Origin: Phallusia mammillata
Taxonomy: Eukaryota
Assembly: GCA_965637545.1 (NCBI GenBank)
Contig: OZ281494.1
Location: 27,218,001-27,282,000, forward strand
Reading direction: 5' to 3'
DNA: 64,000 bases
Shown here: in pieces, positions 3,248 through 59,265 of the stretch
Numbering within the stretch: the stretch's first letter is position 1
How the letters are laid out: each line of letters starts with the position of its first letter
Notes under the pieces: generated by a model
Seen by the model: only the letters and a program-made list of their open reading frames with translations
What the model was told of the DNA's origin: nothing
Database searches by the model: none
Position numbers and translations under genes: made by a program

Positions 3248-4552
3248 ATGAGATTTCTCGTTTTTATGTCTTGGTTAGTGTTCATCGGTATTCGCTTTTC
3301 TTTCGGACAAGTGTAAGTTAAATAACATTGATTTTATAGGCTACTAGTACAATACTTTGCAGTAGTGTTTTGATTCCGTGTTGTAAGTACTTTAGGCTAC
3401 CCGACTTTGTAAGCTATCATAGCTAAAATTAATTCAAAAACGTTCATGTTTCGAAATCGTTCGCATTATTGAGTTAAAATACGATTTGCAACATCATTTA
3501 ATCTAAATTGGGTTCACAAGGCTATCTCGAAACAAATCCGGCTAAGATTAAAACGCCGTGTACCCAATACGTTATGCAACATGATGACAAAACACAAACA
3601 TTAGCGATTTATTTTTAGTCTCGATTTTGACGAATATGTGAAATTGGATGAAAAACTTCACAAGGATGCAGATTTTCGCAGCAGCCTCGAGACAATAAAT
3701 AATGAAACTGTTGGTCAACATGCCATGCATAATGTTGATTCGAAATGCCTTAGAATATTTCGGGACCTTGTGCAAGGGACGGACCAGTCTATGGGAGCCA
3801 GATCCCTTTCTCCCTGGCGATATGTGAAAAATTACGACAGTCGAAGGTAGACAGAAGTTAATAATTGTTGATGTTTGTACATTTTGCAGTAATTGCTTGA
3901 AATCTAAAGTAGCCTGACTGCTTTACACAACTATATCACTTGAATATGAATTCTGAAAGCATTTTTCTGTTGAATTTGTACCTAAAACAGATTTAAGAAA
4001 TCCTTTCCGTAATCGAATCAAATATTTTGCAATATGTTTATCCCCGCTGCTGCTAAGTTTAAATTAAAATTTTTCACCAAACACTTTTTGCAAGGAGAAA
4101 TTCCCTAAATGTTTCCAAAATGACCAAAATAGTTTACAGTTCGCTTTCAAAACTGTGGAAATGCAAAAATAACTGGAAATCGTGCAAAGTGCTTTTTGCC
4201 ATTGCCTAAGCGTGCGAACTATTTGCATAATTTCCTTATTTGGACTCTCTTGTCCAACCACACTTCTGTAAAAATCAGACACCTTTGCATATTTCCGGAC
4301 AGAGCGCCGGAAGACCGTTACATACTGGACACAGCTTGCGTCTGTCGCGGATGCTTTGTTAAAAACGGGGCATCATCTTTTGTCTACACTGAGAGTCTGA
4401 TCAGCAGACCTATCCCCTTCAGTCGCAACGTACGAGCAATGGATTACACATCTGTACCAGTCAAAGTCAACCTGGGCTGCCATTGCGTGTTTCCAACCAC
4501 GAGAAGTTCACCCAACATTGTGGATGACTCTGAAATATTATTGTTTTCGTAA
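3248..4552 (+). CDS. IL17: IL-17 family cytokine, class a, copy 1 (~180 aa)
   Basis: Exons 3248-3312 (signal peptide MRFLVFMSWLVFIGIRFSFGQ), 3619-3846 (...ARSLSPWRYVKNYDSRR) and 4303-4552 (APEDRYILDTACVCRGC...VKVNLGCHCVFPT...). GT-AG introns, both phase 2; the frame closes. Confidence 0.9.
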
Positions 4553-4591
4553 AACAATATGCTTATAATTTGTTTCGTTAACTTTATAAAG

Positions 4592-4608
4592 TTCGTTCTA
4601 CGAAGGAA
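4592..4608 (+). promoter_or_regulatory. CDE-like (Roquin-type) tri-loop stem-loop in IL17a 3'UTR
   Basis: TTCG-TTC-TAC-GAA-GGAA; the core TTCTACGAA (4596-4604) fits UUCYRYGAA. Also at 14971, 25643 and 56869. Confidence 0.5.
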
Positions 4609-5376
4609 ATCCTTATGTCAGTTTGAAATTCAAATTAAATACTTTTGTCAAAAATATTACCGACTGCTGATTCAGTGCGCCAATTATTTTTAGAACGGTG
4701 TTATAAAGTTTGGTATTGTACACCTTAGTATAAGCATAGCGAAAATAAATCCATCAAAATTAAACAACCAGTGATATCAGGGTATGACTTTTGGGTGATT
4801 TTCTTTTCTACACCCTGGTACAGAAAACTTTCGAGGGTGGTCATACATTACATCGCTTCAGTAACTATAAACTTACCTCAAATCTAAAGAAATACAGCTA
4901 GTTAAACTTGGATTAAATTAGGTTTTTGAACGACCGCAGTGTGTTTAAGATTTTATTTATCGTTGTCAAACAAATGTGAGAAATGCACAGGCCATGTAGG
5001 TCCAGTGTTGAAACCGGGTATTCTTGCTTTGCTGGTTGTTGTGACAAAGTAGCATGTTTGTGTATTTTGGTTTATGACTGATGTCATAGCCTGCTGTAAG
5101 TTGGCAAAACAATTATAAAAGCCCCGAAGTAATTTGCGTACAATTTTGCACGTTGAGTTTGAGTTGTGCCAGTTTCGTTTATTTTCAGCTGTCTTTGGGA
5201 TTTTGACATCAATCAAGTTAAGGGTAGTGTTTTTCTGTTTTTTAGAAAGTAGAAATTGAACTTGAAGGTAGAGCTACTAACATAAGAACTCACAATAGCC
5301 CGGTTTTCTAATATCCGGTAGATGACGCACGCAAATTTGTAAAAGAAATTTGTGTAAAAAATGCTCACAGGTAGGG

Positions 5377-5487
5377 GACAGGACCTTGGCCGAATGGTCA
5401 GGCACGCCTGACCCATGTATACAGACATAAAAAACCTTGATCGGGAACCCCGTGAAAAAAATAAATAAATAAATGAATAAATAAAAT
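5377..5487 (+). mobile_element. tRNA(Leu)-like short SINE, copy 1
   Basis: Head GACAGGACCTTGGCCGAATGGTCAGGC (box-A-like), (TAAA)n tail, and a 15-bp TSD TGCTCACAGGTAGGG at 5362-5376 and 5488-5502. Confidence 0.7.
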
Positions 5488-6263
5488 TGCTCACAGGTAG
5501 GGCTATTAGGGTTGGTCTGAGGTTCCATAATAATTATAACAATAAAATCAACACAAAGACCTAGTTCTTTATGCTCTTTACGCCATCTACCGGAAATTAG
5601 TAAACCTGGTTACTGTGCGTTCTTACGTTAGTAGCTCTTCCGGGTTTAAACCATAACTCCATGCGACGTTTTGTTCCTTGTCACGTTACTATGCTTATAG
5701 CACACGTTCATGTTTTGAAAACGGTTGATCCTTTAATGAGTCGAACTAAAGTACAATTTAAAACATTAGTTAGTCGAAATTAAAATAAACTGACTGCACA
5801 AGGCAACCTCATAAAACTCCGGTTAAGTTTGGAACGCGGTGTAAATCGTTTCCATACCTGATTCCTGCGTATTGTAGTCCTCTATGTTTGTTTTTTTAAC
5901 GCGTGTAAGATTTTGAATTATCCGCAATTTTTTGCGCTAAATTAATCGCAGCAATTTTATTATAGCAGATTTTTTTATCTTGGAAATTTTATTGCATAGT
6001 GTTTACGTCGCATCAATTTCATAGTGTTAACGTCAGTTCAGCAGGAGCGTGTTTTGTTCACGTTTTGCTAAACAAGCTTTTTGGGAGATTTTTTTACTTC
6101 TTGCATAAAACTCTTTCTTGTAATTTTGGGTTTCCCAAGTTCTTTTTCTGTCGTACAGGTTGCGTCGTACAGGTTTCATGTGCTGCTCTAACCAGAGTTA
6201 CCAGATATGACTTTAAAGTACAATTCTATAACTTTCATCCAGTGGCCTTGTGATACCGCGTGA

Positions 6264-6521
6264 TTGGAAATGTATATCGGGAAGACTGGAAGGTCACTCA
6301 ACACCCGCCGAAAAGAACATCAACGGGATGTTGCCAACAACGATGCGAAGAAGTCGGCTCTTTCCAATCACGCGATATCACAAGGCTACCGTATTGAGTT
6401 CAATGCAGCGTCTGTTGTGGCCCGACAGCCTGACTACAGGAAAAGACTATTTCTTGAGTCATGGAATATTTACCAACAGGGCAACATAATGAACATTAAA
6501 ACAGACGTGATGCTTTCGTGA
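6264..6521 (+). mobile_element. Penelope-like element relic, GIY-YIG endonuclease C-terminal fragment (copy 1)
   Basis: YIGKTGRSLNTRRKEH...SALSNH...RLFLESWNI, preceded by a degraded PCD motif with a stop. No reverse transcriptase is seen. Confidence 0.8.
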
Positions 6522-6690
6522 TGCTACAGGCACATGCTTAAAGATTAGAGTTGGGCGCTTTTATTTTATTTGTAACATCATCCGATTAAATACACAGTGA
6601 AAAAAAATAACACAAAAGAAACAGTTATGGTGAGTATAAAGTGGCGAATGTAAAAACAAGACACAATCGAAAAATTTTGATTCATTTAAT

Positions 6691-7939
6691 TTAAATCTTG
6701 GGAGGAAAGTCATTTTTCCACCTCAGCCAGTTTTTACTTTTGCGTTTTCGACCGCGTTTAGATTTTGGACGCGTAAAACAAACAGGTTTAGGGGCAGTTT
6801 TGTTTGATGGGGGTTCGTTGCCTGGAAATTGACAAGTACATGCAAATGGGACCTGGACTGTTTCAATACAGCGACGGCGTTTGCCATACTTTTTTACCAC
6901 CGTCATGGGCAAATACATTGGCACACTTCTCATACTCTTGTTTTCCCTTCCGGTGTCATAGTCGATGCAGCCGTCGCAAAGGCACTGGGCTTTTGATATG
7001 TACTTTGGTTTTCTAAAATAAAATGTTAAAAGTGAGCATTTGTTAACTTTTTAGGTTTTAATTTTGTTTTAAAATAGCATGAATATGAAAAAAATCGTAT
7101 CTTCTACCTCTTTAGGGCAGAAAAACTCCTACTTTGCAAAAAGTAATTTGTAAAAGCATGAATCATTACCTTCTCGCATCAAATTCGCGCACAAATTTCC
7201 AGGGTGACAAACTGCGTTGTCTAACAGCTTTGGCTTTTTGTTTATATCGTTTATTGAAACGTGGGCAGCTTTTACTTTGGACTGATCTCTTCTCGCGACC
7301 AACATAGTCCAAGTCATCGCTAGTGACGTTCACCACTTCCACTGTTTCCATGAGTTTCGGATCTTGGAGTAGAAGTTCTTCAAACTGATAGTATTCGTTT
7401 AACGGTTCTGCCAAAACCCTGTAATGAATAAATAGCTGTTTGTATAACAAGTTGGAGGTTGTAATTGACAATTCACGCGTGTATATTCTGTGTTCCCAGC
7501 AAGGGGGGAGTTTTTTTGGCATAAAGTAACACAAACGAGGATATAGTGCTTGGTAGCAGCTTTCAATATTATATAGCTTAAACCGTAAGAACACCGTTTA
7601 TTATCATCTCAAATAGTATGACAGTGATTCGAATTTGGTCAATACACAAACACTGCATTGCATCCAAACTATTGTTTATTGTTGGACGAACTTATACCTA
7701 ACTACACTGTTCGGAATAAGATAAACCTTCTCACGAAAGTGTAAAGTACACATGCAATGAATTAAAATCATATTTATGCCGATTTGCAGACACGACGATT
7801 TGGTAGCTTGAGTTAGATGGTATGATAAAGGGTAATTTACATTTCAATATACTTACCTTTCGTTGTTGAACATTTCAACTTCGCTTCCGGTCGCCAATCC
7901 CGCAATAAAAATCATCAACGTCGGCAAGATCAATGTCAT
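6691..7939 (-). CDS. IL17: IL-17 family cytokine, class b, copy 1 (~217 aa; REKR furin site, basic C-tail)
   Basis: Exons 7939-7857 (MTLILPTLMIFIAGLATGSEVEMFNNE), 7418-7170 (...GREKRSV...RSLSPWKFVREFDARR) and 7012-6691 (KPKYISKAQCLCDGC...VPFACTC...RPKSKRGRKRKSKNWLRWK...). Phase 2/2 introns. Confidence 0.9.
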
Positions 7940-8018
7940 GTCTTTATATGCTCACTTCTCTGCTTAAACTGTTGTCAAACTGCATCTGCAAACTGAATTG
8001 TTGACACGACGCGGCAAG

Positions 8019-8026
8019 CTTTTATA
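8019..8026 (-). promoter_or_regulatory. TATA box of IL17b (TATAAAAG)
   Basis: 80 bp upstream of the ATG on the minus strand; the same motif is at 18422-18429 and 29021-29028. Confidence 0.6.
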
Positions 8027-8756
8027 TCAGAAAGAGGAAAACTAACCCAAGGCGCAGCGAAAATGTCAAACAGTTGGCTGTGACAGTTGGCTTGGACGTA
8101 TTTCAACGCAACACATGAGTATACACGCTCGGCGCCAAACTTGACATCAAATCATTGCCATCAGAACTCCCAAAGGTATTTTGGCACAATGTTAAAACAT
8201 GCTTAACAACATGTTTGCAATGTATTTATAACACACATTCTCCTGGGCATTATTAATCTTAAAGGCTAGGTGGATCGCGAGAGTGGTTGGTAGATTTTTA
8301 GTCAAGTTGGCATTTGAGCAAATGCGCAGTTGTTTTGTTAGAGGTAGGAGTGGGTGCGAACAGCGTACTTTGGTGTATTAGAGAATCTGCGATCTATAGC
8401 AAATAGAAACCAAAAAATATATTCCTAGGTGTTTGTTTACTGCAGTACAAAAATTTAAGAGATTAAAACAAATTTAAATGTTGGAGCTTTTACCAAAGGA
8501 CTGTGCGACATAGAACATACATTGGTAGAAACTGTAGCAAAGAAAGTAGAAAGTGTAGAAAGAAGATAAACCTGAAGAAATAAAACGACTTTATATATCC
8601 TTTAGAATATTCATCCTTTAGAATATTTGGGTAATATTCAAAACACATAACACACTGATGTCAAATTAAAACTAAATTAAAATTGGGTAAATTAAACTAA
8701 CAGTGTTTATTTTGTTTGCCAGTGTTACTAGGCAGTATAAAAAAATAGTTCCAAAA

Positions 8757-10212
8757 ATGTTGCGGTTTGCAAATCATCTGTTTCTTTTTACCGTTTTGGC
8801 AGCTTTGGCACATTCATCATATGTTCCACCACCAACATGTGGGTATCATTTTTCCAGTTACTTTTTGTTAATAATGTTAGCGCATAACAATGACTCCAAA
8901 CTTATATTGGCTTATATCAGATATTTCGGATTTTACATTTAGAAAAAAAATAACATTATAAAATTTGGGAGGAATAAAATTCGCAGCGTTATTTAATTAC
9001 TGAACAATATCTAGCGCTCCAACAGACAGTTTGTTTATTATTAACAGTCGTCAATTTTAAAATAATTTTCTTTTTGTGTCAATCCCCTTTTTCATGAGCA
9101 TATCCTCTTTAAAAACATGTGACCACATTTCACTTATTCAATTTATCTAACTAACTGCATCAAAAAATTTTAGGCACCAAGCAAAACGAAATTATTGGTA
9201 GGCCGTTTCCTTGTGACGCGACATGTGCGAACCCGACTTCGTATGACGCGTGCTCCACAAGCACACCAACCTTCGTGCAAATGTCCCTGCGGATTTTTCA
9301 GAACCGAGGAAGGGAACTGTGTTTTTCTTCGCGATTGCCCTCCTAATAAGGGCCATCCTTGTAAGTATCTTCAGATTTAACCACTTAAGCGAGTTTGCAA
9401 AACGATCAATAACCAGCAACTTTAACGTCATTGTGGTTCAGTTACAACTATAGTGATGCATCGAAGTTTCGCTTGGGGAAAACATATCGGCTGAATATGC
9501 CGATTTGGCAATGTTGGTCATTTCTTTTGACAAATTGTTTTGTCTAGAAAACTAAAAAATAATAAAAACAGGAAAATATATTTTTAATATTTTCCATTCG
9601 AAGTCATTTATTATATGATCGTCAATGATCGTACTATCTGTTGGTTAGGGTCTGATACTGTTAAGTATAATCACGTTTAGCTTGGTAAAATATAATAAAT
9701 TGGGTTTACCTCGATTTCAGAAAACACAGTCATTCATTCTCGGTTTTCTTCTTAAAATACGGTTTAAAATTACTGAATTGAACTTTCTTAAAAACATCTT
9801 GATTTTAGAAAACATCATCACCCACTTTTTTAATTTCGTTTTAAAACACAGTCTACTTAAGTAGAGTTTTTACTGTATAAATTTTCTCTCAAACTGCGTG
9901 TTAAATCAACGGGTTTTTAGTGCAAATTACCATGAGGATTTTCAAAAATTTAAAACGAAGCACCCTGCAGCAGTTTGCAATTGTAACTCGCAGTTTATTA
10001 TTTTTTCAGGGACGCAGTGTGAGGAAGAACAGGTGATGTCTGCTAATCCGATGATTGCCGACGTCCCGACCCCTGACTGCGACCCAGTAACTGGAAACTT
10101 CATGCCCACGCAATGTGTTTACATGAGCCAGACTTGTTTCTGTGTTAATGTGTTAACTGGAAAGCAGTTAGATGGAACATCCACAACACTGCCTAAAAAG
10201 CCGAATTGCTAA
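8757..10212 (+). pseudogene. Secreted TIL (trypsin-inhibitor-like) + thyroglobulin type-1 domain gene, copy 1, +1 frameshift in exon 2
   Basis: Exon 8757-8838 is a signal peptide (MLRFANHLFLFTVLAALAHS). Exon 9174-9360 is the TIL domain (CDATCANP...C / CKCPCGFFRTEEGNCVFLRDC) and is 187 nt although phase 1/1 needs 3n. Exon 10010-10212 is the TY domain (QC...CDPVTGNFMPTQC...CFCVNVLTGKQLDGT...PNC). A splice-acceptor-like site precedes the ATG (8710-8722). Confidence 0.8.
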
Positions 10213-13200
10213 GGTTAGATTGTCGACTTGGTATTATAGACTAGTGGTTCTCAAACGTCAAGAATGCGGCGCATGAACAACTGAGATTGCTTTTTATGAC
10301 ATATAAGTAAAAAATGAGCTTTTAAACGTTGTAAATATGTAAGACACATCGCCATCAAATCTAAAAAAACACGAATACAACGATAAAAAACTGTCTTGAA
10401 ATGCCGAGTCCTAAAAGGTTTGGTTTTCTGAGTTGGAGACCTTGTGGTTCTTAATTCCCGTGGCAGGTTAAAATACAGAAGGTGGTACTGAATCTAGGTA
10501 AACAAATGAACACTATAGAACCAATGTAAAAAAACAGCACGAAACCACATGTAACCAAAGGTGCCGTGCCCTAATGGAAACTTCTGTTAACTACAGAAGT
10601 ACTCCAGCCAATAAAAACATGAAAGAAACTATGTCATCGATACAGCAGTGATTCTTAAACGGTGTGCAACACACTGGTGTACCCCGATAGATTTTTAAGT
10701 GCCGCCAATTTAATCAGTTCAAACATTTCCTGGTGTTGTAGCATTTGATTACTAAATGCATGACAACGTATTGAAGCTCATTGTTTTTGTGGTTTCCATA
10801 AAAAGTAATCTTAGACACCACAATGAAGTTGCAAAATAACCATTTTTAACAATTTTGTTATGTTTGCCTTCAAAGCATGCCATGAAATAAACAATTAGGT
10901 CATTAATGGGGCGCATTTTTGAAAAGTTTGAGAACCAATGGCCTACAGCGCTTGACGTGAAAACATTTTTGCTTGAAATTTATTTGTTTGTTTTTTGCAG
11001 ATTCTGGTCGATAAGGAATGGTAAAAAAGAGCTTTGACAATGCATGCTTTTTGATTTTATTGAGTTTAATTGCAAATAAAAACGCACCGTAAATTCTTGC
11101 ATATCTGTAACTATTCAACCGAAAGTTTTTTCTTGTGAACCGTTTAACGCAAGAGGACATATGTTGGCTTTATGTTATTGCTGAATTTACATTAAAGTGG
11201 TTTTAGGTCGAATGCACAAAAAATTATGAATGAAAGTTTTAAATGCAGCAGTGGACAGAAACGTCAGTTACCCAAACGAATAATAATAACAAACTATACA
11301 TTAACACTATCATAAAGCTATGTTGCAATGATGTTTGTATGTGTAAAAATTGACAAACGTTCTGTGCACGAATGAACTATTTTTCAACAAAGACGATGGA
11401 CCTGAGGTAAAGTATGGAAAAATGTAGCACTCTACCTGCGGCAGGGCGTTGATATTGTTTGCTAAGTGTGTGTTGTGTTCAATCGCCAGTCATCTTTATA
11501 ACTCCGCAGGCAAAGTGTGCTGTAACTACACAAGGCGTTTTGTGTTCGTCTTGCCAAATCTGTTGGATGTTTGGCAGCAAGCAAGTTTAGGCTTTAGCTT
11601 GGTACTATGTTAGCCCACAAGTAGTTTAGGATATGTTTGAGTAGCCTTTTTGGATGGTGTCGATTGGAGCTGTTGCAAAACAAGCACTTGTAAAAGTAAT
11701 TGAGAAACATGCGACGATCAGAGCCAAATTGAGTAGACTCAATAAACTGCAAGTTGAAGTTAAGGTTGTATGAGCCATCATGAACCGCAACAACATAAAT
11801 ATCAACGACGACTTTGGTAAGTACAATAATTGTCAAACATTCCCCCAAATGCTCCCCAATGACAAAAACTTTTCCCGCCGTTGCAACTGTTGCGCCATTG
11901 TATCATTATTACGACATAACTGCAAATCTTCTATATGTCTCAATTTCAAGGTTTTTGTCTAAACGTGTAGTAAGGTTGTTGTTTGCGGTAGTTAGTTGTG
12001 TCAGTTTTAAGTTGTGCTGTAGTGGTATAATTTACAATTATAAGTTAGGTTATTTGACTGTTTGTAGTGCAATGTACTTTATTCTATTTGGTTTAGGTTG
12101 TCGAAAACCAACGTTCTCATTCTAGAGACTGAACGGTAGAACTAGCAAAAAACTTGTACGTTACTGTTAGATGAAAACGAATGACTGAAAGCGCCTTATT
12201 GTCATAATAACCATTGCGACTACAACTCAAGAGTGGCATGTGGTGGCTGCCTTCTTAAAACCATGATCAGGATCTCCAGGTTAGAAGTTTAGAAAATGTC
12301 TTTTGTTTTTGATTTTTCCTAAAATAGAAAGTCGTAGTCAATTTACTGCAGATCCGCTTGCTTTGCATGTTATATTGCTGCGGACAATTGTTTTTCTACT
12401 GCCACGACTACAAATTGTCAAGATATCGAACGGTGTTTTTATAGATTATTGGGATTTCAGGTCAGCCGTTTTTTGATTGTTTGATAAACTATTTATCATA
12501 GTGCACCAGAGTCAAATTCATTTTGTGTCATCAATCACGATTTAACTGTTTCGATCATGATGTGATTGCAACATATCATACCCATGTTTACTCTGAAACG
12601 TTGTTTGACCATTAGAAGCTTTAAAATATTACTGTTGAAAATAAACCTAAATCATGAATACCAAAATATAGTTTGTGAAACCACGACGTATAGATATTGC
12701 GAAACAATTATGTAAGCAAGTGCAATTTGTCTTGTATTTTTGTTAACTGGTAATTTTTGGCAATTATTTTGCTTATTTAAGTACAGTCTTTGCGTATTTG
12801 CGTGACTAACGTTTGTATGTGACGTCACACACTTTGTACTGACGTATACCAACGCCAAGGCTAACCAAAAGAGATGAAGAATATTATCATTCGCTTTCGC
12901 CACGACTTTCGATTGAGAAAGCAACAATTTGAACAAAACTGAAAAACATAATTATATAGCTGTAAGAAGTTTGAGTATATAATGGAATATTGTGTTCACA
13001 TATGTATTTTCAAGAAAAATATCCGTTTGGCGAAATGGACGAACATAATGACAGCATATTATCAAATCTAACGTCATGTTTTGAAATGTAAACACTATCG
13101 TGCTTAAAGCATTGCAATTACTCCCAATTTTTTCCTACGATTGAAGAAAAAACGCAAAACCTGTGCTCGAACTTCCATGACCTTTGTTTGCGCGTTTTGT

Positions 13201-13594
13201 TTGTTTTCTTGTGTTAAAAATGAACAGGTCTGTTTTTCTAACTCGACTCTATCGGTATTTACGTGCGGATATGACAAAAACACGACGCAACAAACTAAAC
13301 TATTATTGCACTTGCGTTTTTCCTATCATGGACGCATCCTATGACTGCAAACACGACGTGGACGAACTTACTCATTTTACGCCGCGTTATTTGAGCAACG
13401 TGCCGCTCAGGGCGTGTCACAAATATTCACCAGATATGCTGTGACAAACTCTTGAAAAAACATGGAACAAGTTTTACCGGAATGAAGTCAGTTTCCTAGA
13501 CTTCCGTCAGTCGTATGAAAAGACTAGACAGCACATCTGATAATCAGAAACTAGTTTGTAAGAGCAAGATACTTTGTTACAAATACATTCGAGT

Positions 13595-48134: not shown

Positions 48135-48142
48135 ATTTAAAC

Positions 48143-48587: not shown

Positions 48588-50887
48588 ATTTAAACTATGG
48601 GTTGAAACTTTATGTCGACATCCAGGAGACTTTGGCTTGCAGCATATTTTTCTTAGAAAATGGAACGATTTTGTGTAAAAATAGATTTATAAAAACTCTA
48701 AAAAACAACCTATAACACAAAACAATAATCCGAAAGTTTTCTTCAGCACAATTAGACACACTGTTACTCATACAAAACACACGCGCAACACAAAACTGTT
48801 AAACAACCTTCAATGATTATTTCACTCACTGAGATCCAGTGAGTAACTTACCTAGTGCTTGCGTGTGAATGGTGGAAAGGCATTCCTGCAGAAGTTGAAG
48901 AATCTCTCCAAGATACGGCTGTATGTTCTCCTTTGCTGCATTTGCTTTAAGTAAAGACCGCGTAATTTACGAGAGCAAAATTTAAACATTTTCTAGCATT
49001 TTAGTTCTACACATATTTTCCTTTTTTTACTTCGTGCTTCTAATACGCCATTGTTTTTTATTTATGGCTTAAACGCTTACTGTCCTTTCATAGATATCTC
49101 TCGTAACAAAATTTCAGTCTGTTTTACTCTTTGTAAATAGGAAACTACGAACGAATTAGGCTAAATGCATAACCCAAGCTTTTTATGCAATGACCAGGGT
49201 TATGTGATAATCCAGATGTTTTTTTTGGTAATAAACGGCTACGATTAGGATTTGCAATCTCTATGCCATTAAACGGATTCATATGTGTTTATATGAAATT
49301 CAACATTAAAATCCAATATAAATTTAGTTGATTGGGGAACTTCGAGTTTTTTTTTCTAGGCATATTTATTGTTCGTCCCCGCGCAAATTGAAAAACATAA
49401 CAAAGCATTGAAGCCAAAATACGTATTTTCCATGTTTACCGAATACTAACCTACTGCCCCGATGGCGCTTACAGCCAACTCCTTGGAGTGAATATCATTT
49501 GACGATCGAAGTGATGCAAGAAGATTCTGCGTGAGTTGGTCCAGGTACGGAAGAATGCCTGATTCTGTTACAGTTACAGGGAACAAAATGAAACTACTTG
49601 ACTGACTTTTTAACGGTTATGTTGCTATAAGTTATAAATAAGTTTATTGCTTATGTATGTTTACCTATTACCAAATGCTAGATAAACTTATTTTTCGGGA
49701 AAAAATGCGCAGGACCTTGAATGCACGGACAGACCAGAAAAAAATAGGGGTAATATTACTATTTCGTGACAACAAATTATTTTACCTTACTGCGATATGC
49801 TTTATGTTTAGATTAGATTATCGTCTTTCAAAGTTACTGCAATACAGAATACTATGAAAACTCAATTAATCCTTTCAGGGACGCCTCAAAGCATGCACCC
49901 CCAACAACTATTTGCAAATAAGGCGTTACATGTCGTTATACGCATGTCGTTATAGATCGTTTAAGGACTATGAAAAGGTCAAAAAATTCCAGAGCTGTTG
50001 AGGTTTTGAATCTTTTTATTTTTTTGCTTTGTACCTAGGTCTTCAACAAAATTTTCCAAAGCATAGTAAGCCCTTGTGATTCCTGAATCTTTGCCTCCAC
50101 CACTGAGTTGTTCAAGGAGTGAGAAAAGAATTGGCATGACTTGTGGTGCATACTTGCTTATGTCCGGCTAAAATTAAAGACAGAAACACGTTGAGAAAAT
50201 TTTTCTGCAGGATCAGCTTTGAAAACGGTATCGCAAAAAAGCTTCATGGTAACATTTTATCAAATAAGTTTCACTTACTGCAACATTCACAGCTTATATA
50301 AATGGTGAAACACTGTTTTGTCACATTATTTTATTGTGGTAGTTACCTGTAAATGCTCTGAAAACTGTCCCATGGCAAACATTGCAGCGTTTCTCACTTT
50401 TGGATGAGGATCTGTTGCACCTCGACAGACTGTCTCCACAAATGAATTTAAATGACTAGAAAATACACAAATAAATATTTTGAAGTTCTTATAAATTCTG
50501 AATCCCAACACAAATAACCACATAAATCGTTAAAAATACTGAGTCTTATCAATAGAAAGGAATTTTGAGAAAGATTTTACCAGCTTTGGCAAATGCAAAC
50601 AAGTATAATGTAACATGTTTTACTTGTTTTTGATAAATTCAGAAGTGCCCTCAGCAAGACAAGCAAGTGTGAGTAATAATCCTCTCTTATGTTCATCATT
50701 GCCTTGTGACAAGCAAGTTGCAACAAAAGGAAGCTGTGATAGAATGCATTGCTTAGTATTGAGGTAAATTTTATTCAGCATTACTTCATGGTTTTGCATA
50801 AGTTAGATTGCATAGGAACATCCACAACACTGCCTAAAAAGCCGAATTGCTAAGGTTAGATTGTCGACTTGGTATTATAGACTAGTG

Positions 50888-51147
50888 CAGGGGTGGGCAA
50901 ACTTTTCAGTGCAAGGGCCGCATTAAAAAGTTCTTAATCTTATGGGGCCGCATAGTATTTCACCAACGGCCGCCAATTGCTTGCTTGTTTTGTTTTAAAA
51001 TAACTGGTGTAAAGAATCAGGTTTATATCATATATATATATATATGTACTATTTAAAGCTGCCTAAAATGCTCATATTAATAATTTCTAACTTGGTGCAT
51101 AAATTCAGCTGAACGGAGCTCTTTCGTCTGCCTACGCCGCTGCCCTG
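50888..51147. mobile_element. hAT-like MITE inserted into the terminus of an older MITE
   Basis: Left TIR CAGGGGTGGGCAAAC, degenerate right end, exact 8-bp TSD GACTAGTG. Empty site at 10240-10247. Confidence 0.75.
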
Positions 51148-51482
51148 GACTAGTGGTTCCCAAACGTCAAGAATGCGGCGCATGAACACCTGAGATTGCT
51201 TTTTATGACATATAACTTAAGTAAAAAATGAGCTTTTAAACGATTTAGTGCATGGCGCATTGCCACCGATCTGAAAACACTTGAATACAATGATGTAAAA
51301 CTGCCTTGAAATGCCGAGTCCTAAAAGGTTTGGTTTTCTGAGTTCTTGTGGTTGGTACCTTGTGGTTCTAAATCTCCGTGGCAGGTTAAAACACAGAAGG
51401 TGGTACTGACTCTAGGTAAACAAATAAACACTATAGAACCAATGTAAAAAACATGCACGGAACCACATGTAACCAAAGGTAA

Positions 51483-52300
51483 TGTAACGTCCCGTGAACG
51501 CGCCCCGGAACGTCACACGAGGGGGGATTGAAACGCGATTCCTAAAGGTCTCCAACAAGCAGTCCACACAGATAGGGTGTTTTGTAGATCTTATATTCAA
51601 ACACTTTCAATGAAGAATGAAGAGGACGGTGGGAGGCGATAGAAACGAATAGGAAACGGTTTCTACAAAGACATGCATTAGCACTGCGCTTTAAATGTAG
51701 GAATGTAACTTTAAGCTCACCAACTGTTATGGGAACCGGAAGAAAACAAATAACATGGGCGATTCCAGAAATCACTGGCACACGCCTAAATACACAATAA
51801 AACATGAGACCACAATATGCCATTATGACGTCATACACAATGCTTACCAAGCTATGTAGAGCAACAGTGTAGAAAGTCACGCTTCACGTGAGTATCGTAC
51901 AAGAACGCTGCGTAAACAATTACAACTTTAGCAACTTGAATGAACCCAACTACACGTACAGTACGACTATAAAAAAGGGAAATGACATTTTAGGTCAAGT
52001 CAACAGAGGTTAGCATTCATTATGGTAATTCACAATATTGAGTCATTAAACACATATATACAAAGTGACTCACCAATAATCGTCAACACGACAATATACA
52101 GCTTTTCTACAACAACCGACGCAGCACCGTGCTCCACGGAAGTCAGCAACGAAAAGAACTAAACCACGTTGCGTTATCACACAAATCTGGTAGTCGATTG
52201 TTACGTCACACAACGCACTAGGCTACAAAACAAGTTGTATATAGTGAAGAAAAGCGGAAATCAATAGAAATCGGCAATTACTGGCAAATAAGATGTAACA
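51483..52300. mobile_element. Probable solo LTR (818 bp)
   Basis: Present only in unit 4; TGTAAC...ACA termini; 5-bp flanks GGTAA/GGTAC where the other copies have a single GGTGC. Confidence 0.65.
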
Positions 52301-55300
52301 GGTACCGTGCCCCAATGGAAACTTCTGTTAACTACAGAAGTACTCCAGCCAATAAAAACATGAAAGAAACTATGTCATCGATACAGCATGAGTGATTCTT
52401 AAACGGTGTGCAAAACACTAGTGTACCCCGATAGATTTTTAAGTGCCGCAAATTTAATCAGTTCAAACATTTCCTGGTGTTTTAGCATTTGATTACTAAA
52501 TGCATGACAACGTATTGAAGCTCATTGTTTTTGTGGTTTCCATAAAAGTAATCTTAGCCATCACAATAAAGTTGCAAAATAACCATTTTTAACAAGTTAT
52601 GTTCACCTACAAAGCGTGCCATGCAATAAAATATTAGTTCATTAATGCGGCGCATTTTTCAAAAGTTTGAGAACCACTGGCCTACAGCGCTTGACGTGAA
52701 AAGATTTTTGCTTGAAATTTATTTGTTTTTTTGCAGATTCTGGTCGATAAGGAATGGTAAAAAAGAGCTTTGACAATGCATGCTTTTTGATTTTATTGAG
52801 TTTAATTGCAAATAAAAACGCACCATAAATTCGTGTATATCTGTAACTATTCAACCGAAAGTTTTTTCTTGTGAACCGTTTAACGCAAGAGGACATATGT
52901 TGGCTTTATGTTATTGCTGAATTTACATTAAAGTGGTTTTAGGTCGAATGCACAAAAAATTATGAATGAAAGTTTTAAATGCAGCAGTGGACAGAAACGT
53001 CAGTTACCCAAACGAATAATAATAACAAACTATACATTAACACTATCATAAAGCTATGTTGCAATGATGCTTGCTGTGTAAAAAATGACAAACGTTCTGT
53101 GCACGAATGAACTATTTTTCAACAAAAACGATGGACCTGAAGTATGGAAAAATGTAGCACTCTACCTGCGGCAGGGCGTTGATATTGATTGCTAAGTGTG
53201 TGTTGTGTTCAATCGTCAGTCATCTTTGTAACTCCGCAGGCAAAGTGTGCTGTAACTACACAAGGCGTTTTGTGTTCGTCTTGCCAAATGTGTTGGATGT
53301 TTGGCAGCAAACAAGTTTAGGCTTTAGCATGGTACTATGTTAGCCCACAAGTACAGTATGTTAGGATATGTTTGAGTAGCCTTTTTGGATGGTGTCGATT
53401 GGAGCGGTTGCAAAACACGCACTTGTAAATGCAATTGAGAAACATGCGACTATCAGAGCCAAATTGAGTAGACTCAATAAACTGCAAGTTGAAATTCAGG
53501 TTGTATGAGCCATCATGAACCGCCACAACATAAATATCAACGACGACTTTGGTAAGTACAATAACGTCAAACATTCCCCAAAATGCTCCCCAATGACAAA
53601 AACTTTTCCCGCCGTTGCAACCGTTGCGCCATTGTATCATTGTTACGACATAACTGCAAATCTTCTATATGTCTCAATTTTAAGGTTTTTGTCTAAACGT
53701 GTAGTAAGGTTGTTGTTTGTGGTAGTTAGTTGTGACAGTTTAAAGTTGTGCTGTAGTGGTTTAAATTACATATTATACTTATAATTTATGAGTTAGTTTA
53801 TTTTGACTGTGTGTAGTGCAAGGTACTTTATTCTATTTGGTTTAGGACCCAAACCTAAACTTTAGGTTGTCGAAAACCAACGTCCTCATTCTAGAGACTG
53901 AAGGGTAGAACTAGTAAAAGTCAAGTGACTGAACAGTAGAACTAGCAAAAGTCAAGAGACTGAACGGTAGAACTAGCAAAAAGCTTGTAGGTTACGGTTA
54001 GATTATAACGAATGATTCGCAGCGTCTTATTATCATAATAACCATTGCGACTACAACTCAAGAGCCGCACTGTGGTGGCTGCCTTCTCAAAACGATGACA
54101 GGATCTCCAGGTTAGAAGTTTAGAACAGGTCTTTTGTTTTGGATTTTTCGAAAGGTCGTGGTTGATTTACTACACATCCGATTGCTTTGGCCCATTTCAT
54201 TTTAATAAGGTGACATATACGATCACCAAACTGTTCCCGATTAAACCTATTGAATGGTTGCTTGTAACAAATATGTGCGAACATGTCATTGTAAACATGA
54301 TATATTGCTACGGCAATTGTTTTCTATTGCCACGTCTACAAGTCGTCACGATATCGAACTGTACTTTTATAGTTTATTTTTTATTGGGATTTCAGGTCAG
54401 ACGTTTTTTAATTGTTTGATAAACTAGTCATCATAGTGCACCATCAGAGAGTCAAATTCATTTTGTGTCATTAATCACGATTTAAACACGATTTAACTGT
54501 TTCGATCATGATGTGATTGCAACATATCATACCCATGTTTACTCTGAAACGTTGTTTAACTATTAGAAGCTTTAAAATATTACTGTTGAAAATAAACCTA
54601 AATTATGAATACCAAAATATAGTCTGTGAATCCACGACGTATAGATATTGCGAAACAATGTAAGCAAGTGCAATTTGTCTTGTATTTTTGTTAACTGATA
54701 GTTTTTGGCAATTATCTTGCTTATTTAAGTACAGTCTTTGCATATTTTGCGTGACTAACGTTTGCATGTGACGTCGCACATTCTGTACTGACGTAACTCA
54801 ACGCTAAGGCCAACCAAAAAAGATGTAAAAGCATCATTCGCTTTCGCCACCACTTTAGATTAAGAAAGCAACAATTTAAACAAAACCGAAAAATTTAGTT
54901 ATACAGCTGTAAGAGGTTTTAGTAACTAAAAATATTGTGTTCACATATGTATTTTTCAAGAAAAATATCCGTTTAGCGAAATTTACGAACATAATGACGG
55001 CATATTGTCAAATCTAACGTCTTGTTTTGAAATGTAAACACGATCGTGCTTAGAGCATTGTAATGACTCCCAATTTTCTCATACGATTGAAGAAAAACGC
55101 GAAAGCTGTGCTCCAACCTTTATGACCTTTGTTTGCCGTAAATGGACAGGTATGTTTCTCTAACTCGACACCATCGGTATTTACGTGCGGATATGACGAA
55201 AAAACGACGCAAAATACTAAACTATTATTGCACTTGCGTTTTTTTCTATCCTGCACGCTTTCTGTGACTCCAGACACGACGTGGACGAACTTACTCATTT

Positions 55301-55508
55301 TACGTCGCGTTATTTGAGCAACGTGCCGCTCAGGGCGTGTCACAATTGACAAACTCTTGAAAAAACATGGAACAAGTCTTACCGGAATGAACTCAGTTTC
55401 CTAGACTTCCGTCAGTCGTACAAAAAGACTAGACAGCATATCTGAATATCAGAAACTAGTTTGCAAGACCAAACAACTTTGACTTCTGCCAAAATATCAA
55501 GTTCGAGT

Positions 55509-56825
55509 ATGGTGAAATGTCTTGTTTTTATGGCTTGGTTAGTGTTCACCGGTGTTGGCTTCTCCATCGGACAAGTGTAAGTTAAATAAGATTGATTTTA
55601 CAGGCTACTAGTGCTATGCTTTGCAATTGTGTTTTTATTCTGTGTTGTAATTAAGTGCTTTAGGCTACACGACTTTGTACGCTTTCAAAACATGCATTGT
55701 AGAATTATCTGGGTTAATTAATTAAATATCCGTTCATGTTTCGAAATCGTTTGATGAGAGGTAAAGTACGATTTAAAACATGGTTAAGTCTCAAATGACT
55801 GCACAGTCTAGCTCGTTAAGTGTTGAACGCCGTGTACCCAACACGTTCTACTATGATAGCAAAACACAAACATTAGCAATTTATTTTTAGTCTTGATTTC
55901 GACGAATATGTGAAATTGGATGAAAAACTTCACAAGGATGCAGATTTTCGCAGCAGCCTCGAGACAATAAATAATGAAACTGCTGGTCAACATGCCATGC
56001 ATAATGTTGATTCGAAATGCCTTAGAATATTTCGGGACCTACTGCAAGGGACGGACCAGTCTATGGGAGCCAGATCCCTTTCTCCCTGTCGATATGTGAA
56101 AAATTACGACAGTCGAAGGTACACAGAAGTTAATAATTGTTGATGTTTGTACATTTTGCAGTAATTGCTTGAAATCTAAAGTAGCCTGACTGCTTTACAC
56201 AACTATATCACTTGAATATGAATTCTGAAAGCATTTTTCTGTTGAATTTGTACCTAAAACAGATTTAAGAAATCCTTTCCGTAATCGAATAAAAATATTT
56301 TGCAATATGTTTATCCCCGCTGCTGCTAAGTTTAAATTAAAATTTTTCACCAAACACTTTTTGCAAGGAGAAATTCCCTAAATGTTTCCAAAATGACCAA
56401 AATAGTTTACAGTTCGCTTTCAAAACTGTGGAAATGCAAAAATAACTGGAAATCGTGCAAAGTGCTTTTTGCCATTGCCTAAGCGTGCGAACTATTTGCA
56501 TAATTTCCTTATTTGGACTTTCTTGTCCAACCACACTTCTGTAAAAATCAGACACCTTTGCATATTTCCGGACAGAGCGCCGGAAAACCGTTACATACTG
56601 GACACAGCTTGCGTCTGTCGCGGATGCTTTGTTGAAAACGGGGCATCATCTTTTGTCTACACTGAGAGTCTGATCAGCAGACCTATCCCCTTCAGTCGCA
56701 ACGTACGAGCAATGGATTACACATCTGTACCAGTCAAAGTCAACCTGGGCTGCCATTGCGTGTTTCCAACCACGAGAAGTTCACCCAACATTGTGGATGA
56801 CTCTGAAATATTATTGTTTTCGTAA
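55509..56825 (+). CDS. IL17: IL-17 class a, copy 4 (~181 aa; divergent signal exon; SPW>SPC)
   Basis: Exons 55509-55576 (MVKCLVFMAWLVFTGVGFSIGQ), 55891-56118 and 56576-56825; full-length C-terminus. Confidence 0.85.
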
Positions 56826-58112
56826 AACAATATGCTTATAATTTGCTTCGTTAACTTTATAAAGTTCGTTCTACGAAGGAAATCCTTATGTCAGTTTGAA
56901 ATTCCAAATAAAATACTTTTGTCAAAAATATTACCGACTGCTGATTCAGTGCGCCAATTATTTTTAGAACGGTGTTATAAAGTTTAGTATTGGGCACCTT
57001 AGTATAAGCATAGCGAAAATAAATCCATCAAAATCAAACGACCAGTGATATCAGGGTATGACTTTTGGGTGATTTTCTTTTCTACGCTCTGGTACAGAAA
57101 ACTTTCGAGGGTGGTCATACATTACATCCCTTCAGTAACTATAAACTTACCTCAAATCTAAAGAAATACAGCTAGTTAGACTTGGATTAAATTAGGTTTT
57201 TGAACGACCGCAGTGTGTTTTAAGAATTTATTTTTCGTTGTCAAACAAATGTGAGAAATGCACAGGCCATGTAGGTCCGGTGTTGAAACCGGGTAGCCTA
57301 TTGTAAAAAATGCTCACGGGTAGGTCGTCTGAGGTTTCATAATAATTATAACAATAAAATCAACACAAAGACCTAGTTGTTTATGCTCTTTGCGCCTTCT
57401 ACCGGAAATTAGTAATCCTGGTTACTGTGCGTTCTTACGTTAGTAGCTCTTCCGGGTTTGAACCATAACTCCATGCGACGTTTTGTTCCTTGTCACGTTA
57501 CTATGCTTATAGCACACGTTCATGTTTTGAAAACGGTTGATCCTTTAATGAGTCGAACTAAAGTACAATTTAAAACATTAGTTAGTCAAAATTAAAATAA
57601 ACTGACTGCACAAGGCAACCTCATAAAACTCCGGTTAAGTTTGGAACGCGGTGTAAATCGTTTCCATACCTGATTCCTGCGTATTGTAGTCCTCTATGTT
57701 TGTTTTTTTAACGCGTGTAACATTTTGAATTTTTCGCAATTTTTTGTGCTAAATTAATCGCAGCAATTTTATTATAGCAGATTTTTTTTATCTTGGAAAT
57801 TTTATTGCATAGTGTTTACGTCGCATCAATTTCATAGTGTTAACGTCAATTCAGCAGGAGCGTGTTTTGTTCACGTTTTGCTAAACAAGCTTTTTGGGGA
57901 GATTTTTTTTACTTCTTGCATAAAACTCTTTCTTGTAATTTTGGGTTTCCCAAGTTCTTTTTCTGTCCTGCAGGTTGCGAAGCATAATTCAAAATGTCCC
58001 TAAAATCGTCCATAACTGTAATTTTTATGTGCTGCTGTAACCAGAGTTACCAGATATGACTTTAAAGTGCAATTCTATAACTTTCATCCAGTGGCCTTGT
58101 GATTACGCGTGA

Positions 58113-58397
58113 TTGGAAATGTATATCGGGAAGACTGGAAGGTCACTCAACACCCGCCGAAAAGAACATCAACGGGATGTTGCCAACAGCGATGCGAAGA
58201 AGTCGGCTCTTTCCAATCACGCGGTATCACAAGGCCACCGTATTGATTTTAATGCAGCGTCTGTTGTGGCCCGTGAGCCCGACTACAGGAAAAGACTATT
58301 TCTTGAGTCATGGAATATTTACCAACAGGGCAACACAATGAACATCAAAACAGACGTGATGCTTTCAGCGTGCTACAGGCACATGCTTAAAGATTAG
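58113..58397 (+). mobile_element. Penelope-like GIY-YIG relic (copy 4)
   Basis: Same 94-aa frame as 27334-27618. Confidence 0.8.
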
Positions 58398-58541
58398 AGT
58401 TGGGCGCTTTTATTTTATTTATAACATCGTCCGATTAAATACACAGTAAAAAGAAAAATAGCTTAACACAAAAGAAACAGTTATGGCGAGTATAAAGTGG
58501 CGAATGTAAAAGCAAGACACAATCGAAAACTTTTGATTCAT

Positions 58542-59265
58542 TTAATTTAAATCTTTGTAGGAAAAGTCATTTTTCCACCTCAGCCAGTTTTTACTTTTGC
58601 GTTTTCGACCGCGTTTAGATTTTGGACGCGTAAAACAAACAGGTTTAGGGGCAGTTTTGTTTGATGGAGGTTCGATGCCTAGAAATTGACAAGTACATGC
58701 AAATGGGACCTGGACTGTTTCAATACAGCGACGGCGTTTGCCATACTCTTTTACCACCGTCATGGGCAAATACATTGGCACACTTCTCATACTCTTGTTT
58801 TCCCTTCCGGTGTCATAGTCGATGCAGCCGTCGCAAAGGCACTGGGCTTTTGATATGTACCTTGGTTTTCTAAAATGAAATGTTGAAAGTGACCATTTCT
58901 TAACTTTTTAGGTTTTAATTTTGTTTGAAACCAGCACTAAAAGGAAAAAAATCGTATCTTCTACCTCTTTTGGGCAGAAAAAAATCATACTTTACACAAA
59001 AGAAGATTGTAAAAATATTAACCATTACCTTCTCGCATCAAATTTCCAGGGTGACAAACTTCGTTGTCTAACATCTTTGGCTTTTCGTTTATATCGTTTA
59101 TTGAAACGTGGGCAGCTTTTACTTTGGACCGATCTCTTTTCGCGACCAACAGAGTCCACGTCATCGCTAGTGACGTTCACCACTTCTACTGTTTCCATGA
59201 GTTTCGGATCTTTGAGTAGAAGTTCTTCAAACTGATAGTATTCGTTTAACGGTCCAGCCAAAACC
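58542..59265 (-). pseudogene. IL17: IL-17 class b, copy 4, lacking exon 1 and promoter
   Basis: Exon 2 (59265-59029) has a 12-nt deletion (SPWKFDARR); exon 3 is 58869-58542. At 59380 the sequence jumps to the equivalent of ~30207, deleting ~1.6 kb including the signal-peptide exon. Confidence 0.85.

What the first reader, a model, noticed from the sequence alone, without database searches (positions are those of the whole stretch)
3248..59265. Eleven-locus IL-17 cytokine array in birth-and-death evolution
Five deeply diverged classes: a x4, b x4, c, d, e. All complete loci share the 3-exon phase 2/2 architecture with intron 2 splitting the last Arg of DxRR; exon 1 is 83 nt in b-e, and exon 2 is 228 nt in both a and e. 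Old paralogs are overlaid by young tandem amplification, truncation, promoter change and pseudogenisation. IL-17 expansions are known in invertebrates, but this two-tier structure with graded functional variants looks like an active immune-cytokine diversification locus.
Basis: partly seen in the sequence, partly recalled or inferred. Interest (0 to 1): 0.8.

Follow-up and report, generated by a model that had tools for sequence, protein, structure and literature searches.

The report
Sea-squirt IL-17 cytokine gene array
This stretch of a sea-squirt chromosome really holds eleven copies (ten readable, one broken) of genes for IL-17-type immune messenger proteins, multiplied by recent block duplications; this adds an example to a pattern already known from other marine animals and is not a new kind of system.

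Summary
Pfam IL17 (PF06083) hits exactly eleven last exons in the window, out of 24 hits in the 240-Mb genome. Three more lie just past the right edge, giving a 14-locus array.

All intact genes have three GT-AG exons in phase 2/2. Intron 2 splits the last Arg of D-x-R-R. Exon 1 is 83 nt in b, c, d and e. Exon 2 is 228 nt in a and e.

"Five deeply diverged classes" is overstated. Classes b and d are 64% identical and a and e 38%, so there are three old lineages (a/e, c, b/d).

Three age tiers are visible:
- the old classes;
- a paralogous a'-b'-b''-c' cluster about 0.9 Mb away, with dN/dS of 0.15-0.34 against the window genes (purifying selection);
- young copies from a 30.6-kb tandem duplication, which also copied the 3' part of importin-4, and from 10.4-kb [a b] repeats with mosaic divergence that suggests gene conversion.

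Only b4 is clearly dead: it has no exon 1 and a 12-nt deletion. a2 and a3 lose a 16-residue tail. a4 has SPW changed to SPC.

No positive selection and no transcripts were found. Read depth could not be tested. No earlier scan note reports this array on other DNA.

Verdict: new member of a known kind.

The parts
3248..4552 (+). IL17-a1, intact, 180 aa. Exons 3248-3312 (65 nt), 3619-3846 (228 nt), 4303-4552.
   Evidence: GT-AG, open frame. Pfam IL17 26.6 bits on exon 3.
6691..7939 (-). IL17-b1, intact, 217 aa, with a basic C-terminal tail. Exons 7939-7857 (83 nt), 7418-7170 (249 nt), 7012-6691.
   Evidence: Pfam IL17 55.6 bits. phmmer to IL-17F 3jvf, E 0.002.
13595..14927 (+). IL17-a2. Same plan as a1, but a TGA at 14877-14879 ends the protein after ..CHCVFPTT. 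The tail is 16 aa shorter and all knot cysteines are kept.
17094..18342 (-). IL17-b2, intact, 217 aa. One amino-acid difference from b1.
24259..25599 (+). IL17-a3. Same early TGA as a2, at 25549-25551.
27763..28941 (-). IL17-b3, intact, 219 aa. A 1-nt indel changes the last few residues. 17 nonsynonymous and 11 synonymous differences from b1.
35943..37332 (+). IL17-c1, intact, 179 aa. Exons 35943-36025 (83 nt), 36458-36700 (243 nt), 37119-37332.
   Evidence: Pfam IL17 34.5 bits.
38398..39482 (+). IL17-d1, intact, 190 aa, a close paralog of b. Exons 38398-38480 (83 nt), 38700-38951 (252 nt), 39245-39482.
   Evidence: Pfam IL17 43.8 bits.
42532..43859 (+). IL17-e1, intact, 190 aa, 38% identical to a. 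Exons 42532-42614 (83 nt), 42956-43183 (228 nt), 43598-43859.
   Evidence: Pfam IL17 23.1 bits on exon 3 alone, just under the cut-off. Its group matches the b/d group by hhalign at 98.5%.
55509..56825 (+). IL17-a4, open, 181 aa. Exon 1 is 68 nt (one extra codon, 84% identical to a1-a3). The conserved SPW reads SPC. 11-12 nonsynonymous and 6 synonymous differences from a1-a3.
58542..59265 (-). IL17-b4, a 5'-truncated remnant. It has exon 2 (59265-59029, with a 12-nt in-frame deletion of V-R-E-F) and exon 3 (58869-58542). Exon 1 and the promoter are missing.
   Evidence: The block homologous to 28720-30206 is absent at 59380|59381.
1..29044 (.). Three tandem [a b] units of about 10.4 kb: u1 (starts 518 nt left of the window) to 9779, u2 9857-20191, u3 20192-29044.
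   Evidence: Self-BLAST. Substitution divergence u1-u2 is about 0.9%; u2-u3 is 0.3-10% and mosaic.
20192..50800 (.). Copy 1 of a 30.6-kb tandem segmental duplication. It holds u3 (a3, b3), the 3' part of importin-4 (minus strand) and c1, d1, e1.
50815..64000 (.). Copy 2 of the segmental duplication. It runs to window-equivalent 82234 and holds a4, b4 and, beyond the window, c2, d2, e2. A repeat element is inserted at 51482-52300.
   Evidence: Divergence from copy 1 ranges from 0% to 15% per 500 nt.
32686..32988 (-). Exon of an importin-4 gene copy (host gene, antisense to c/d/e).
   Evidence: phmmer to human importin-4 7unk residues 908-990, E 2e-15. The only nearby IBN_N exon is at window-equivalent 84323-84454.

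Best explanation
The window carries 11 of the 14 loci of an IL-17 ligand gene cluster in a tunicate-type genome.

Gene plan. Each intact gene has three parts:
- exon 1 encodes a hydrophobic signal peptide;
- exon 2 encodes an N-terminal region with one conserved N-x-T site and the chordate-type S-P-W...D-x-R-R motif;
- exon 3 encodes the strands that carry the four knot cysteines (C-x-C ... C-x-C).

Inferred function (from the family). The proteins are secreted as disulfide-stabilised dimers and signal through SEFIR-domain IL-17 receptors to NF-kB. The genome has at least 15 SEFIR loci.

How the copy number arose (shown):
1. Old splits produced three lineages: a/e, c and b/d.
2. An intermediate duplication produced a second a'-b'-b''-c' cluster about 0.9 Mb away. 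Since then the genes have been under purifying selection.
3. A recent 30.6-kb head-to-tail duplication copied [a b + 3' importin-4 with c d e], and two rounds of 10.4-kb [a b] duplication followed. After that came patchy gene conversion, a repeat-element insertion and a 1.5-kb deletion that killed b4.

The young copies look like dosage or neutral copy-number variants, not selected new specificities.
For: - Family: Pfam IL17 hits on 11 last exons. The profile of b/d-type exon 3 finds only IL-17F/IL-17A among solved structures (E 9e-11 to 5e-9). The a/e/c profile matches the b/d profile at hhalign probability 98.5%, E 3e-15.
- Gene models: canonical splice sites and open frames in 10 of 11 loci, with conserved intron positions and phases. 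The same intron positions occur in the 28.2-Mb cluster.
- Constraint: dN/dS is 0.15 for a-a', 0.25 for c-c', 0.28-0.34 for b-b'/b'', and 0.43 for b-d.
- Architecture: self-alignments with three distinct left breakpoints and a defined 50800|50815 junction, and no N in the 124 kb examined.
[quoted passage not shown] The 3-exon plan matches 29 of 34 vertebrate genes (PMC4517768).
- Receptors: SEFIR clusters on C5 and C8.
Against: - No RNA contig from four RNA-type runs lies on the a1 or b1 exons. The tool flags these runs as RNA only by guess, and the stretch held no control gene.
- Exon 3 of e alone is 0.9 bit under the Pfam cut-off.
- dN/dS among the young copies rests on 1-28 changes.
- Copy 2 of the 30.6-kb duplication could still be an uncollapsed haplotype, because read depth was not available.
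- Signal peptides were judged by eye only.
Confidence: 0.85

Rival explanations
1. One reading: an actively diversifying immune locus. The young copies (tail-less a2/a3, SPC a4, b3 with a changed tail, b1/b2 with a swapped upstream region) would be selected, functionally graded variants.
For: The variants exist. b1/b2 and b3 differ upstream of position 8042 = 29044. IL-17 and SEFIR genes are both expanded in this genome. Lineage-specific tandem IL-17 expansions are reported in filter-feeding marine invertebrates (PMC8353272).
Against: All measurable dN/dS values are below 1. a1-a3 differ by 1-2 amino acids plus one nonsense change, and d1 = d2. Mosaic 0-15% divergence points to homogenisation by gene conversion. 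No expression data were found.
Confidence: 0.2
2. Part of the array is an assembly artefact. Copy 2 of the 30.6-kb block (a4, b4, c2, d2, e2) would be the other haplotype of copy 1 laid in tandem, so the true count in the window would be nine loci.
For: Divergence between the two copies is patchy, 0-15% with many indels, as between haplotypes of highly polymorphic sea squirts. d1 and d2 are identical.
Against: There is no N in 124 kb. The junction 50800|50815 joins an importin-4 intron to the start of an [a b] unit with 14 filler bases. It lies within about 300 nt of the other two units' left breakpoints but is not identical to them. Units u1-u3 cannot be explained by two haplotypes. The a4 5' region is 8-15% diverged and carries a repeat insertion.
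Confidence: 0.13
3. Some classes (a, e, c: the 'GCHC' group, which matches Pfam only weakly) are IL-17-fold ligands used for non-immune signalling such as development or hormone-like roles, as shown for arthropod IL-17-domain hormones.
For: The a/e/c types are 24-32% identical to b/d and score only 23-35 bits. Their profile finds IL-17A only at E 0.05-0.2. PMC11087794 reports arthropod CFSH and PTTH ligands binding IL-17 receptors.
Against: They sit in one cluster with the b/d types, share their gene plan, and are clearly homologous. There are no data on expression or function either way.
Confidence: 0.12

Closest known systems
Ciona intestinalis/robusta IL-17 genes (Il17-1, -2, -3; 7 sequences in 6 clusters in the survey of PMC8353272)
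   Same: Tunicate IL-17 ligands of the chordate S-P-W, four-cysteine type. In Ciona they are reported as LPS-inducible in haemocytes and pharynx (PMC6707023, PMC8353272).
   Different: This genome has about 22 credible IL-17 loci, 14 of them in one array built by recent block duplications. Orthology to the Ciona genes could not be tested because no Ciona sequences were within reach of the tools.
Tandem IL-17 expansions of marine invertebrates (sea urchin about 30-35 genes, mussel 33, scallop, octopus, acorn worm)
   Same: Many IL-17 genes lie in tandem on one scaffold, mixing different isoform classes, and the expansions are lineage-specific (PMC8353272, PMC4517768).
   Different: Those ligands are mostly of the six-cysteine C-P-W type with variable exon numbers. 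Here all are the chordate type with a uniform vertebrate-like 3-exon plan. The young tier is a segmental duplication that also carries part of a housekeeping gene.
Vertebrate IL-17A/IL-17F
   Same: The b/d-type exon 3 profile matches only IL-17F/A among solved structures (E 1e-10). They share three exons. In addition to the four knot cysteines, b/d have a Cys in exon 2 ('CP') and another before the last strand pair, and the latter aligns with a Cys of IL-17F.
   Different: b/d carry an extra segment of about 45 residues between the signal peptide and a conserved R-x-K-R site. b also has a 35-residue polybasic tail. Identity to IL-17F is only about 30% over 65 residues.

Membership tests
IL-17 cytokine family (Pfam PF06083) | Match to the IL17 HMM at or above the gathering score (24 bits) | tested here: met
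Exon 3 alone scores a 26.6, b 55.6, c 34.5, d 43.8 bits. e scores 23.1 bits (21.4 in the genome scan), just under the cut-off.
IL-17 cytokine family (Pfam PF06083) | Four conserved knot cysteines in two C-x-C motifs on the C-terminal strands | tested here: met
   C-x-C-x-G-C ... G/A-C-H/T-C is invariant in all 11 loci and in the 28.2-Mb and C3 paralogs.
IL-17 cytokine family (Pfam PF06083) | Chordate ('T2') type: Ser in place of the extra Cys pair, S-P-W motif | tested here: met
   R-S-[LIM]-S-P-W is present in a1-a3, b1-b4, c, d (M-S-P-W in e). a4 reads S-P-C. The type definition comes from PMC11087794 and PMC8353272.
IL-17 cytokine family (Pfam PF06083) | Secreted: N-terminal signal peptide | tested here: inconclusive
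   Exon 1 of all 10 complete genes encodes a hydrophobic N-terminus. No signal-peptide predictor was available. b4 has no exon 1.
IL-17 cytokine family (Pfam PF06083) | Sequence relationship to solved IL-17 structures | tested here: met
   The b/d-type profile hits IL-17F at 9e-11 and IL-17A at 1e-9, and all 24 hits are IL-17A/F. The a/e/c profile is only weak against PDB (E 0.05-0.2) but reaches 98.5% hhalign probability against the b/d profile.
IL-17 cytokine family (Pfam PF06083) | Cystine-knot dimer fold | not tested
IL-17 cytokine family (Pfam PF06083) | Binds an IL-17 receptor and signals through SEFIR/CIKS | not testable with these tools
   Only the presence of 15 SEFIR-domain loci in the genome was shown.
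Birth-and-death multigene family | Duplicates of different ages, with some copies kept and some decaying | tested here: met
   Three age tiers are visible. b4 is truncated.
Birth-and-death multigene family | Copies evolve independently, with no homogenisation | tested here: not met
   Divergence between copies is mosaic: 0% over 1.5 kb around d, and 10-15% elsewhere in the same duplication. The grouping of units differs between the a part and the b part. This indicates gene conversion or unequal exchange.

The most novel reading that the evidence does not exclude
The b/c/d-type ligands may be made as pro-proteins and matured at a conserved R-x-K-R site. The site lies 6-8 residues before the first Cys and is kept in b, d, b', b'' and, as R-K-R-R, in c'. 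That would be a neurotrophin-like activation step not described for IL-17s. In this reading the ligand array and the two SEFIR receptor arrays form a co-expanded, copy-number-variable cytokine-receptor system specific to this sea-squirt lineage.
Probability: 0.2. Interest if true: 0.6.

Novelty: new member of a known kind. Interest (0 to 1): 0.4.

Why it matters
[quoted passage not shown] Ciona, the only well-studied tunicate, has few IL-17 genes.

A 14-gene array (about 22 loci genome-wide) together with tandem SEFIR receptor clusters shows that the large, lineage-specific IL-17 expansions seen in molluscs and echinoderms also occur inside the chordates. It also provides a dated series of duplicates for studying how cytokine repertoires grow.

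The finding does not change how IL-17 biology is understood. It is a useful annotation and comparative-immunology resource. The conserved dibasic site and the polybasic tail of the b type are cheap, testable leads.

Tried and rejected
- Word-index protein search with the b exon-3 frame: no relatives of 65-208 aa, so no named orthologs. This says nothing about absence. The large HMMER search was not used, because Pfam already names the family.
- RNA evidence: the four RNA-type contig runs laid on 3000-8999 gave no contig on a1 or b1 exons. They gave only short repeat-like pieces at 5267-5641 and 6269-6515. The stretch had no control gene, so this is not evidence of silence.
- Read depth and copy number: not obtainable.
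- Rfam: no family reaches its gathering score in the window. Nothing hammerhead-like appears at 22700-23300 even at E <= 1.
- Alternative exon 1 for c (68 nt, 36142-36209): rejected in favour of 35943-36025 (83 nt, GTGAGT donor, better hydrophobic core, same length as b, d, e). No RNA confirms this choice.
- Alternative exon 1 for b4: only weak candidates exist, for example 59468-59386 with a poor donor and no real hydrophobic core.
- Mapping importin-4 exons with Pfam importin-repeat families: these hit only an importin-5-like gene on C5. Two further exon queries against PDB were uninformative.
- Joined spliced proteins were built only inside scripts, for frame checks, alignment, the tree and dN/dS.
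Full report
**What is there**

The window is C1:27218001-27282000 of a 240-Mb, 312-contig assembly with about 37% G+C and no N. Earlier notes of this scan call it a sea squirt, and one names Phallusia mammillata. I did not verify the species. The chordate-type IL-17s found here fit a tunicate.

A six-frame scan of the whole assembly with Pfam IL17 (PF06083) gives 24 hits. Eleven are in the window:
- four on the + strand at 4298, 14673, 25345 and 56571 (type a);
- four on the - strand at 6829, 17232, 27907 and 58686 (type b);
- one each at 37141 (c), 39252 (d) and 43614 (e).

Scanned by reference, exon by exon, the last exons score 26.6 (a), 55.6 (b), 34.5 (c), 43.8 (d) and 23.1 bits (e) against a cut-off of 24. 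The exon-2 pieces alone give nothing.

**Gene models**

Reading the DNA shows the same plan for every complete locus.
- Exon 1 runs from an ATG through a hydrophobic stretch to a GT donor in phase 2.
- Exon 2 ends ...S-P-W-x-[YF]-V-x-x-[YF]-D-[SA]-R-R, with the last Arg codon cut after its second base.
- Exon 3 begins with the third base of that codon and carries C-x-C-x-G-C ... C-[HT]-C.

Exon 1 is 83 nt in b1-b3, c, d and e. It is 65 nt in a1-a3 and 68 nt in a4. Exon 2 is 228 nt in a and e, 249 in b, 243 in c and 252 in d.

The joined frames were made only inside scripts. They are open in ten loci and give these protein lengths:

| Locus | Length (aa) |
|---|---|
| a1 | 180 |
| a4 | 181 |
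| b1, b2 | 217 |
| b3 | 219 |
| c1 | 179 |
| d1 | 190 |
| e1 | 190 |

a2 and a3 carry a TGA that removes only the 16-residue tail after the last knot cysteine.

**Family membership**

- A profile of b/d-type last exons (with paralogs from elsewhere in the genome) finds only IL-17F and IL-17A among all solved structures, at E 9e-11 to 5e-9.
- The a/e/c profile is weak against PDB on its own (IL-17A at E 0.05-0.2).
- The a/e/c profile matches the b/d profile at hhalign probability 98.5%, E 3e-15.
- All proteins have Ser-Pro-Trp and four knot cysteines. This is the type reported as the only one in tunicates and vertebrates (PMC11087794; PMC8353272).
- The three-exon plan is that of 29 of 34 vertebrate IL-17 genes (PMC4517768).

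**How different are the classes**

Full-length identities are:

| Pair | Identity |
|---|---|
| b-d | 64% |
| a-e | 38% |
| c vs all others | 29-32% |
| a or e vs b or d | 24-27% |

The exon-3 tree of 22 loci recovers (a,a',e) with 90/92 support, (c,c') with 87/83 and (b,d) with 93/99. The first two join in one 'GCHC' group with 82/92. The other 'GCTC' genes are unresolved. None of the 15 inner branches reached the tool's strict support threshold, and 5 were drawn open. The domain is short, so this tree is only a grouping aid.

There are therefore three old lineages, not five equally deep classes.

**Age tiers**

1. The old lineages described above.
2. A second cluster at C1:28.198-28.213 Mb has a'(+), b'(-), b''(-) and c'(-). 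It has the same intron positions, and only its exons are conserved with the window array, at 70-86% nucleotide identity. Against it, dN/dS is 0.15 for a (dS 0.68), 0.25 for c, and 0.28-0.34 for b. For b-d it is 0.43. This long-term purifying selection is the best evidence here that a, b, c and d are working protein genes. Type e has no such partner.
3. The young tier is described in the next section.

**Architecture of the young tier**

- Three [a b] units of about 10.4 kb lie head to tail: u1 to 9779, u2 9857-20191, u3 20192-29044.
- A 30.6-kb block (20192-50800) is repeated head to tail as 50815-82234, so c2, d2 and e2 lie beyond the window at 64793-72701.
- The block also contains the 3' part of an importin-4 gene on the minus strand. 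Exon 32686-32988 matches human importin-4 residues 908-990 at E 2e-15.
- The only nearby importin N-terminal exon is at window-equivalent 84323-84454. The complete importin-4 is therefore probably the right-hand copy, and the window holds a 5'-truncated duplicate with c1, d1 and e1 inside it.
- The three duplication junctions have different left breakpoints within about 300 nt of each other.
- Copy 2 has a repeat insertion at 51482-52300.
- Copy 2 lacks the counterpart of 28720-30206. That removed exon 1 and the promoter of b4. b4 also has a 12-nt in-frame deletion (V-R-E-F), and no credible substitute first exon was found.
- Homology between b1/b2 and b3 upstream of the gene stops at 8042/18445 = 29044, so the upstream regions differ.

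**Divergence pattern**

- u1 and u2 differ by about 0.9%.
- u2 and u3 differ by 0.3-10% per 500 nt.
- The two 30.6-kb copies differ by 0% over 1.5 kb around d, about 1% over most of 33-46 kb, and 10-15% in the a4 5' region and at 46.5-50 kb.
- The a-part groups (u1,u2,u3) against u4, but the b-part groups (u1,u2) against (u3,u4).

This is what gene conversion or unequal exchange between repeats produces. It would also fit mosaic haplotypes.

**Selection among young copies**

| Comparison | Result |
|---|---|
| a1-a3 | 1-2 nonsynonymous differences, no synonymous ones |
| a1-3 vs a4 | dN/dS 0.51-0.56 (11-12 N, 6 S) |
| b1 vs b2 | dN/dS 0.09 (1 N, 3 S) |
| b1/2 vs b3 | dN/dS 0.34-0.39 |
| c1-c2 | dN/dS 0.41 (3 N, 2 S) |
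| d1 vs d2 | identical |

Nothing suggests positive selection, but the counts are small.

**Expression**

No listed run is on record as RNA. Four runs guessed to be RNA gave no contig on a1 or b1 exons. The stretch laid had no control gene. Expression is open.

**Is it real or an assembly artefact?**

There is no N in the 124 kb examined. Three units cannot come from two haplotypes, and the junctions are specific. However, the second 30.6-kb copy could still be an uncollapsed haplotype. I put that at about 13%.

**Mechanism**

Shown: family, gene plan, constraint and duplication history.

Inferred from the family: secreted dimeric ligands acting on SEFIR-domain receptors. The genome has 15 SEFIR hits, mostly in two tandem clusters (C5:27.636-27.662 Mb and C8:12.876-12.915 Mb).

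Two leads:
- A conserved R-x-K-R lies 6-8 residues before the first Cys in b, d, b' and b'' (R-K-R-R in c', K-R in c). It is absent in a and e. It could be a proprotein-convertase site. A search of the held paper library for IL-17 with furin-cleavage, propeptide, cystine-knot and invertebrate terms returned no relevant paper.
- The b type has a polybasic tail.

**Comparison and verdict**

Tandem, lineage-specific IL-17 expansions are well documented in molluscs, sea urchin and acorn worm. Ciona has 3 characterised genes, and 7 sequences in one survey. This array is a larger tunicate example with a clear duplication history: a new member of a known kind. The 'active diversification' reading is possible but not supported by the tests that could be run.

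Noticed in passing
window 30207-50800 (- strand) and window-equivalent 59381-84454: The 30.6-kb duplication copies the 3' part of importin-4. The only importin N-terminal (IBN_N) exon nearby lies right of copy 2. The window's copy is therefore probably a 5'-truncated duplicate that hosts c1, d1 and e1 in an intron.
   Followed up: partly
G000 C1:28198310-28213473 (loci L031-L033, L008, L009, L013, L023): A second IL-17 cluster, a'(+) b'(-) b''(-) c'(-), has the same intron positions and the same convergent a/b arrangement. Only the exons are conserved with the window array.
   Followed up: yes
G000 C5:27635824-27661685 and C8:12875771-12915551: SEFIR-domain (IL-17 receptor/adaptor type) genes also stand in tandem clusters (6 and 7-8 hits), several as long single open frames. 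The receptor side seems expanded as well.
   Followed up: no
window 7250-7290 (b1), 38815-38850 (d1), 36560-36600 (c1): A conserved dibasic R-x-K-R motif lies 6-8 residues before the first Cys of the b, d, b', b'' (and c') proteins. It is a candidate proprotein-convertase cleavage site. It is absent in a and e.
   Followed up: partly
window 6691-6790 and its copies in b2-b4: The b type ends in a tail of about 35 residues, rich in Lys/Arg, that d lacks. The b' and b'' paralogs have a shorter basic extension.
   Followed up: partly
window 22963-23011: Rfam gives no support for the hammerhead ribozyme noted earlier on this window. There is no hit at gathering score in the window, and none at E <= 1 in 22700-23300.
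   Followed up: partly
window 51482-52300: An 0.8-kb repeat element is inserted in copy 2. It has about 79% identical inverted copies 4.2-5.0 kb and 9.7-10.5 kb left of the window.
   Followed up: partly
window 5267-5641 and 6269-6515: Short pieces of contigs from the RNA-type runs (93-97% alike) lie between the 3' ends of a1 and b1. They are probably transcribed repeats and not part of either gene.
   Followed up: no
G000 C1:26184831-26185046 (L010): A solitary, very divergent IL-17 gene has its intron directly after S-P-W-K-Y-V and not inside D-x-R-R. The D-x-R-R intron is therefore not universal in this genome.
   Followed up: partly
G000 C1:4085938-4086165 and C1:4306303-4306530: Two importin N-terminal exons with identical scores lie 220 kb apart. 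This is another large duplication (or false duplication) on the same chromosome.
   Followed up: no
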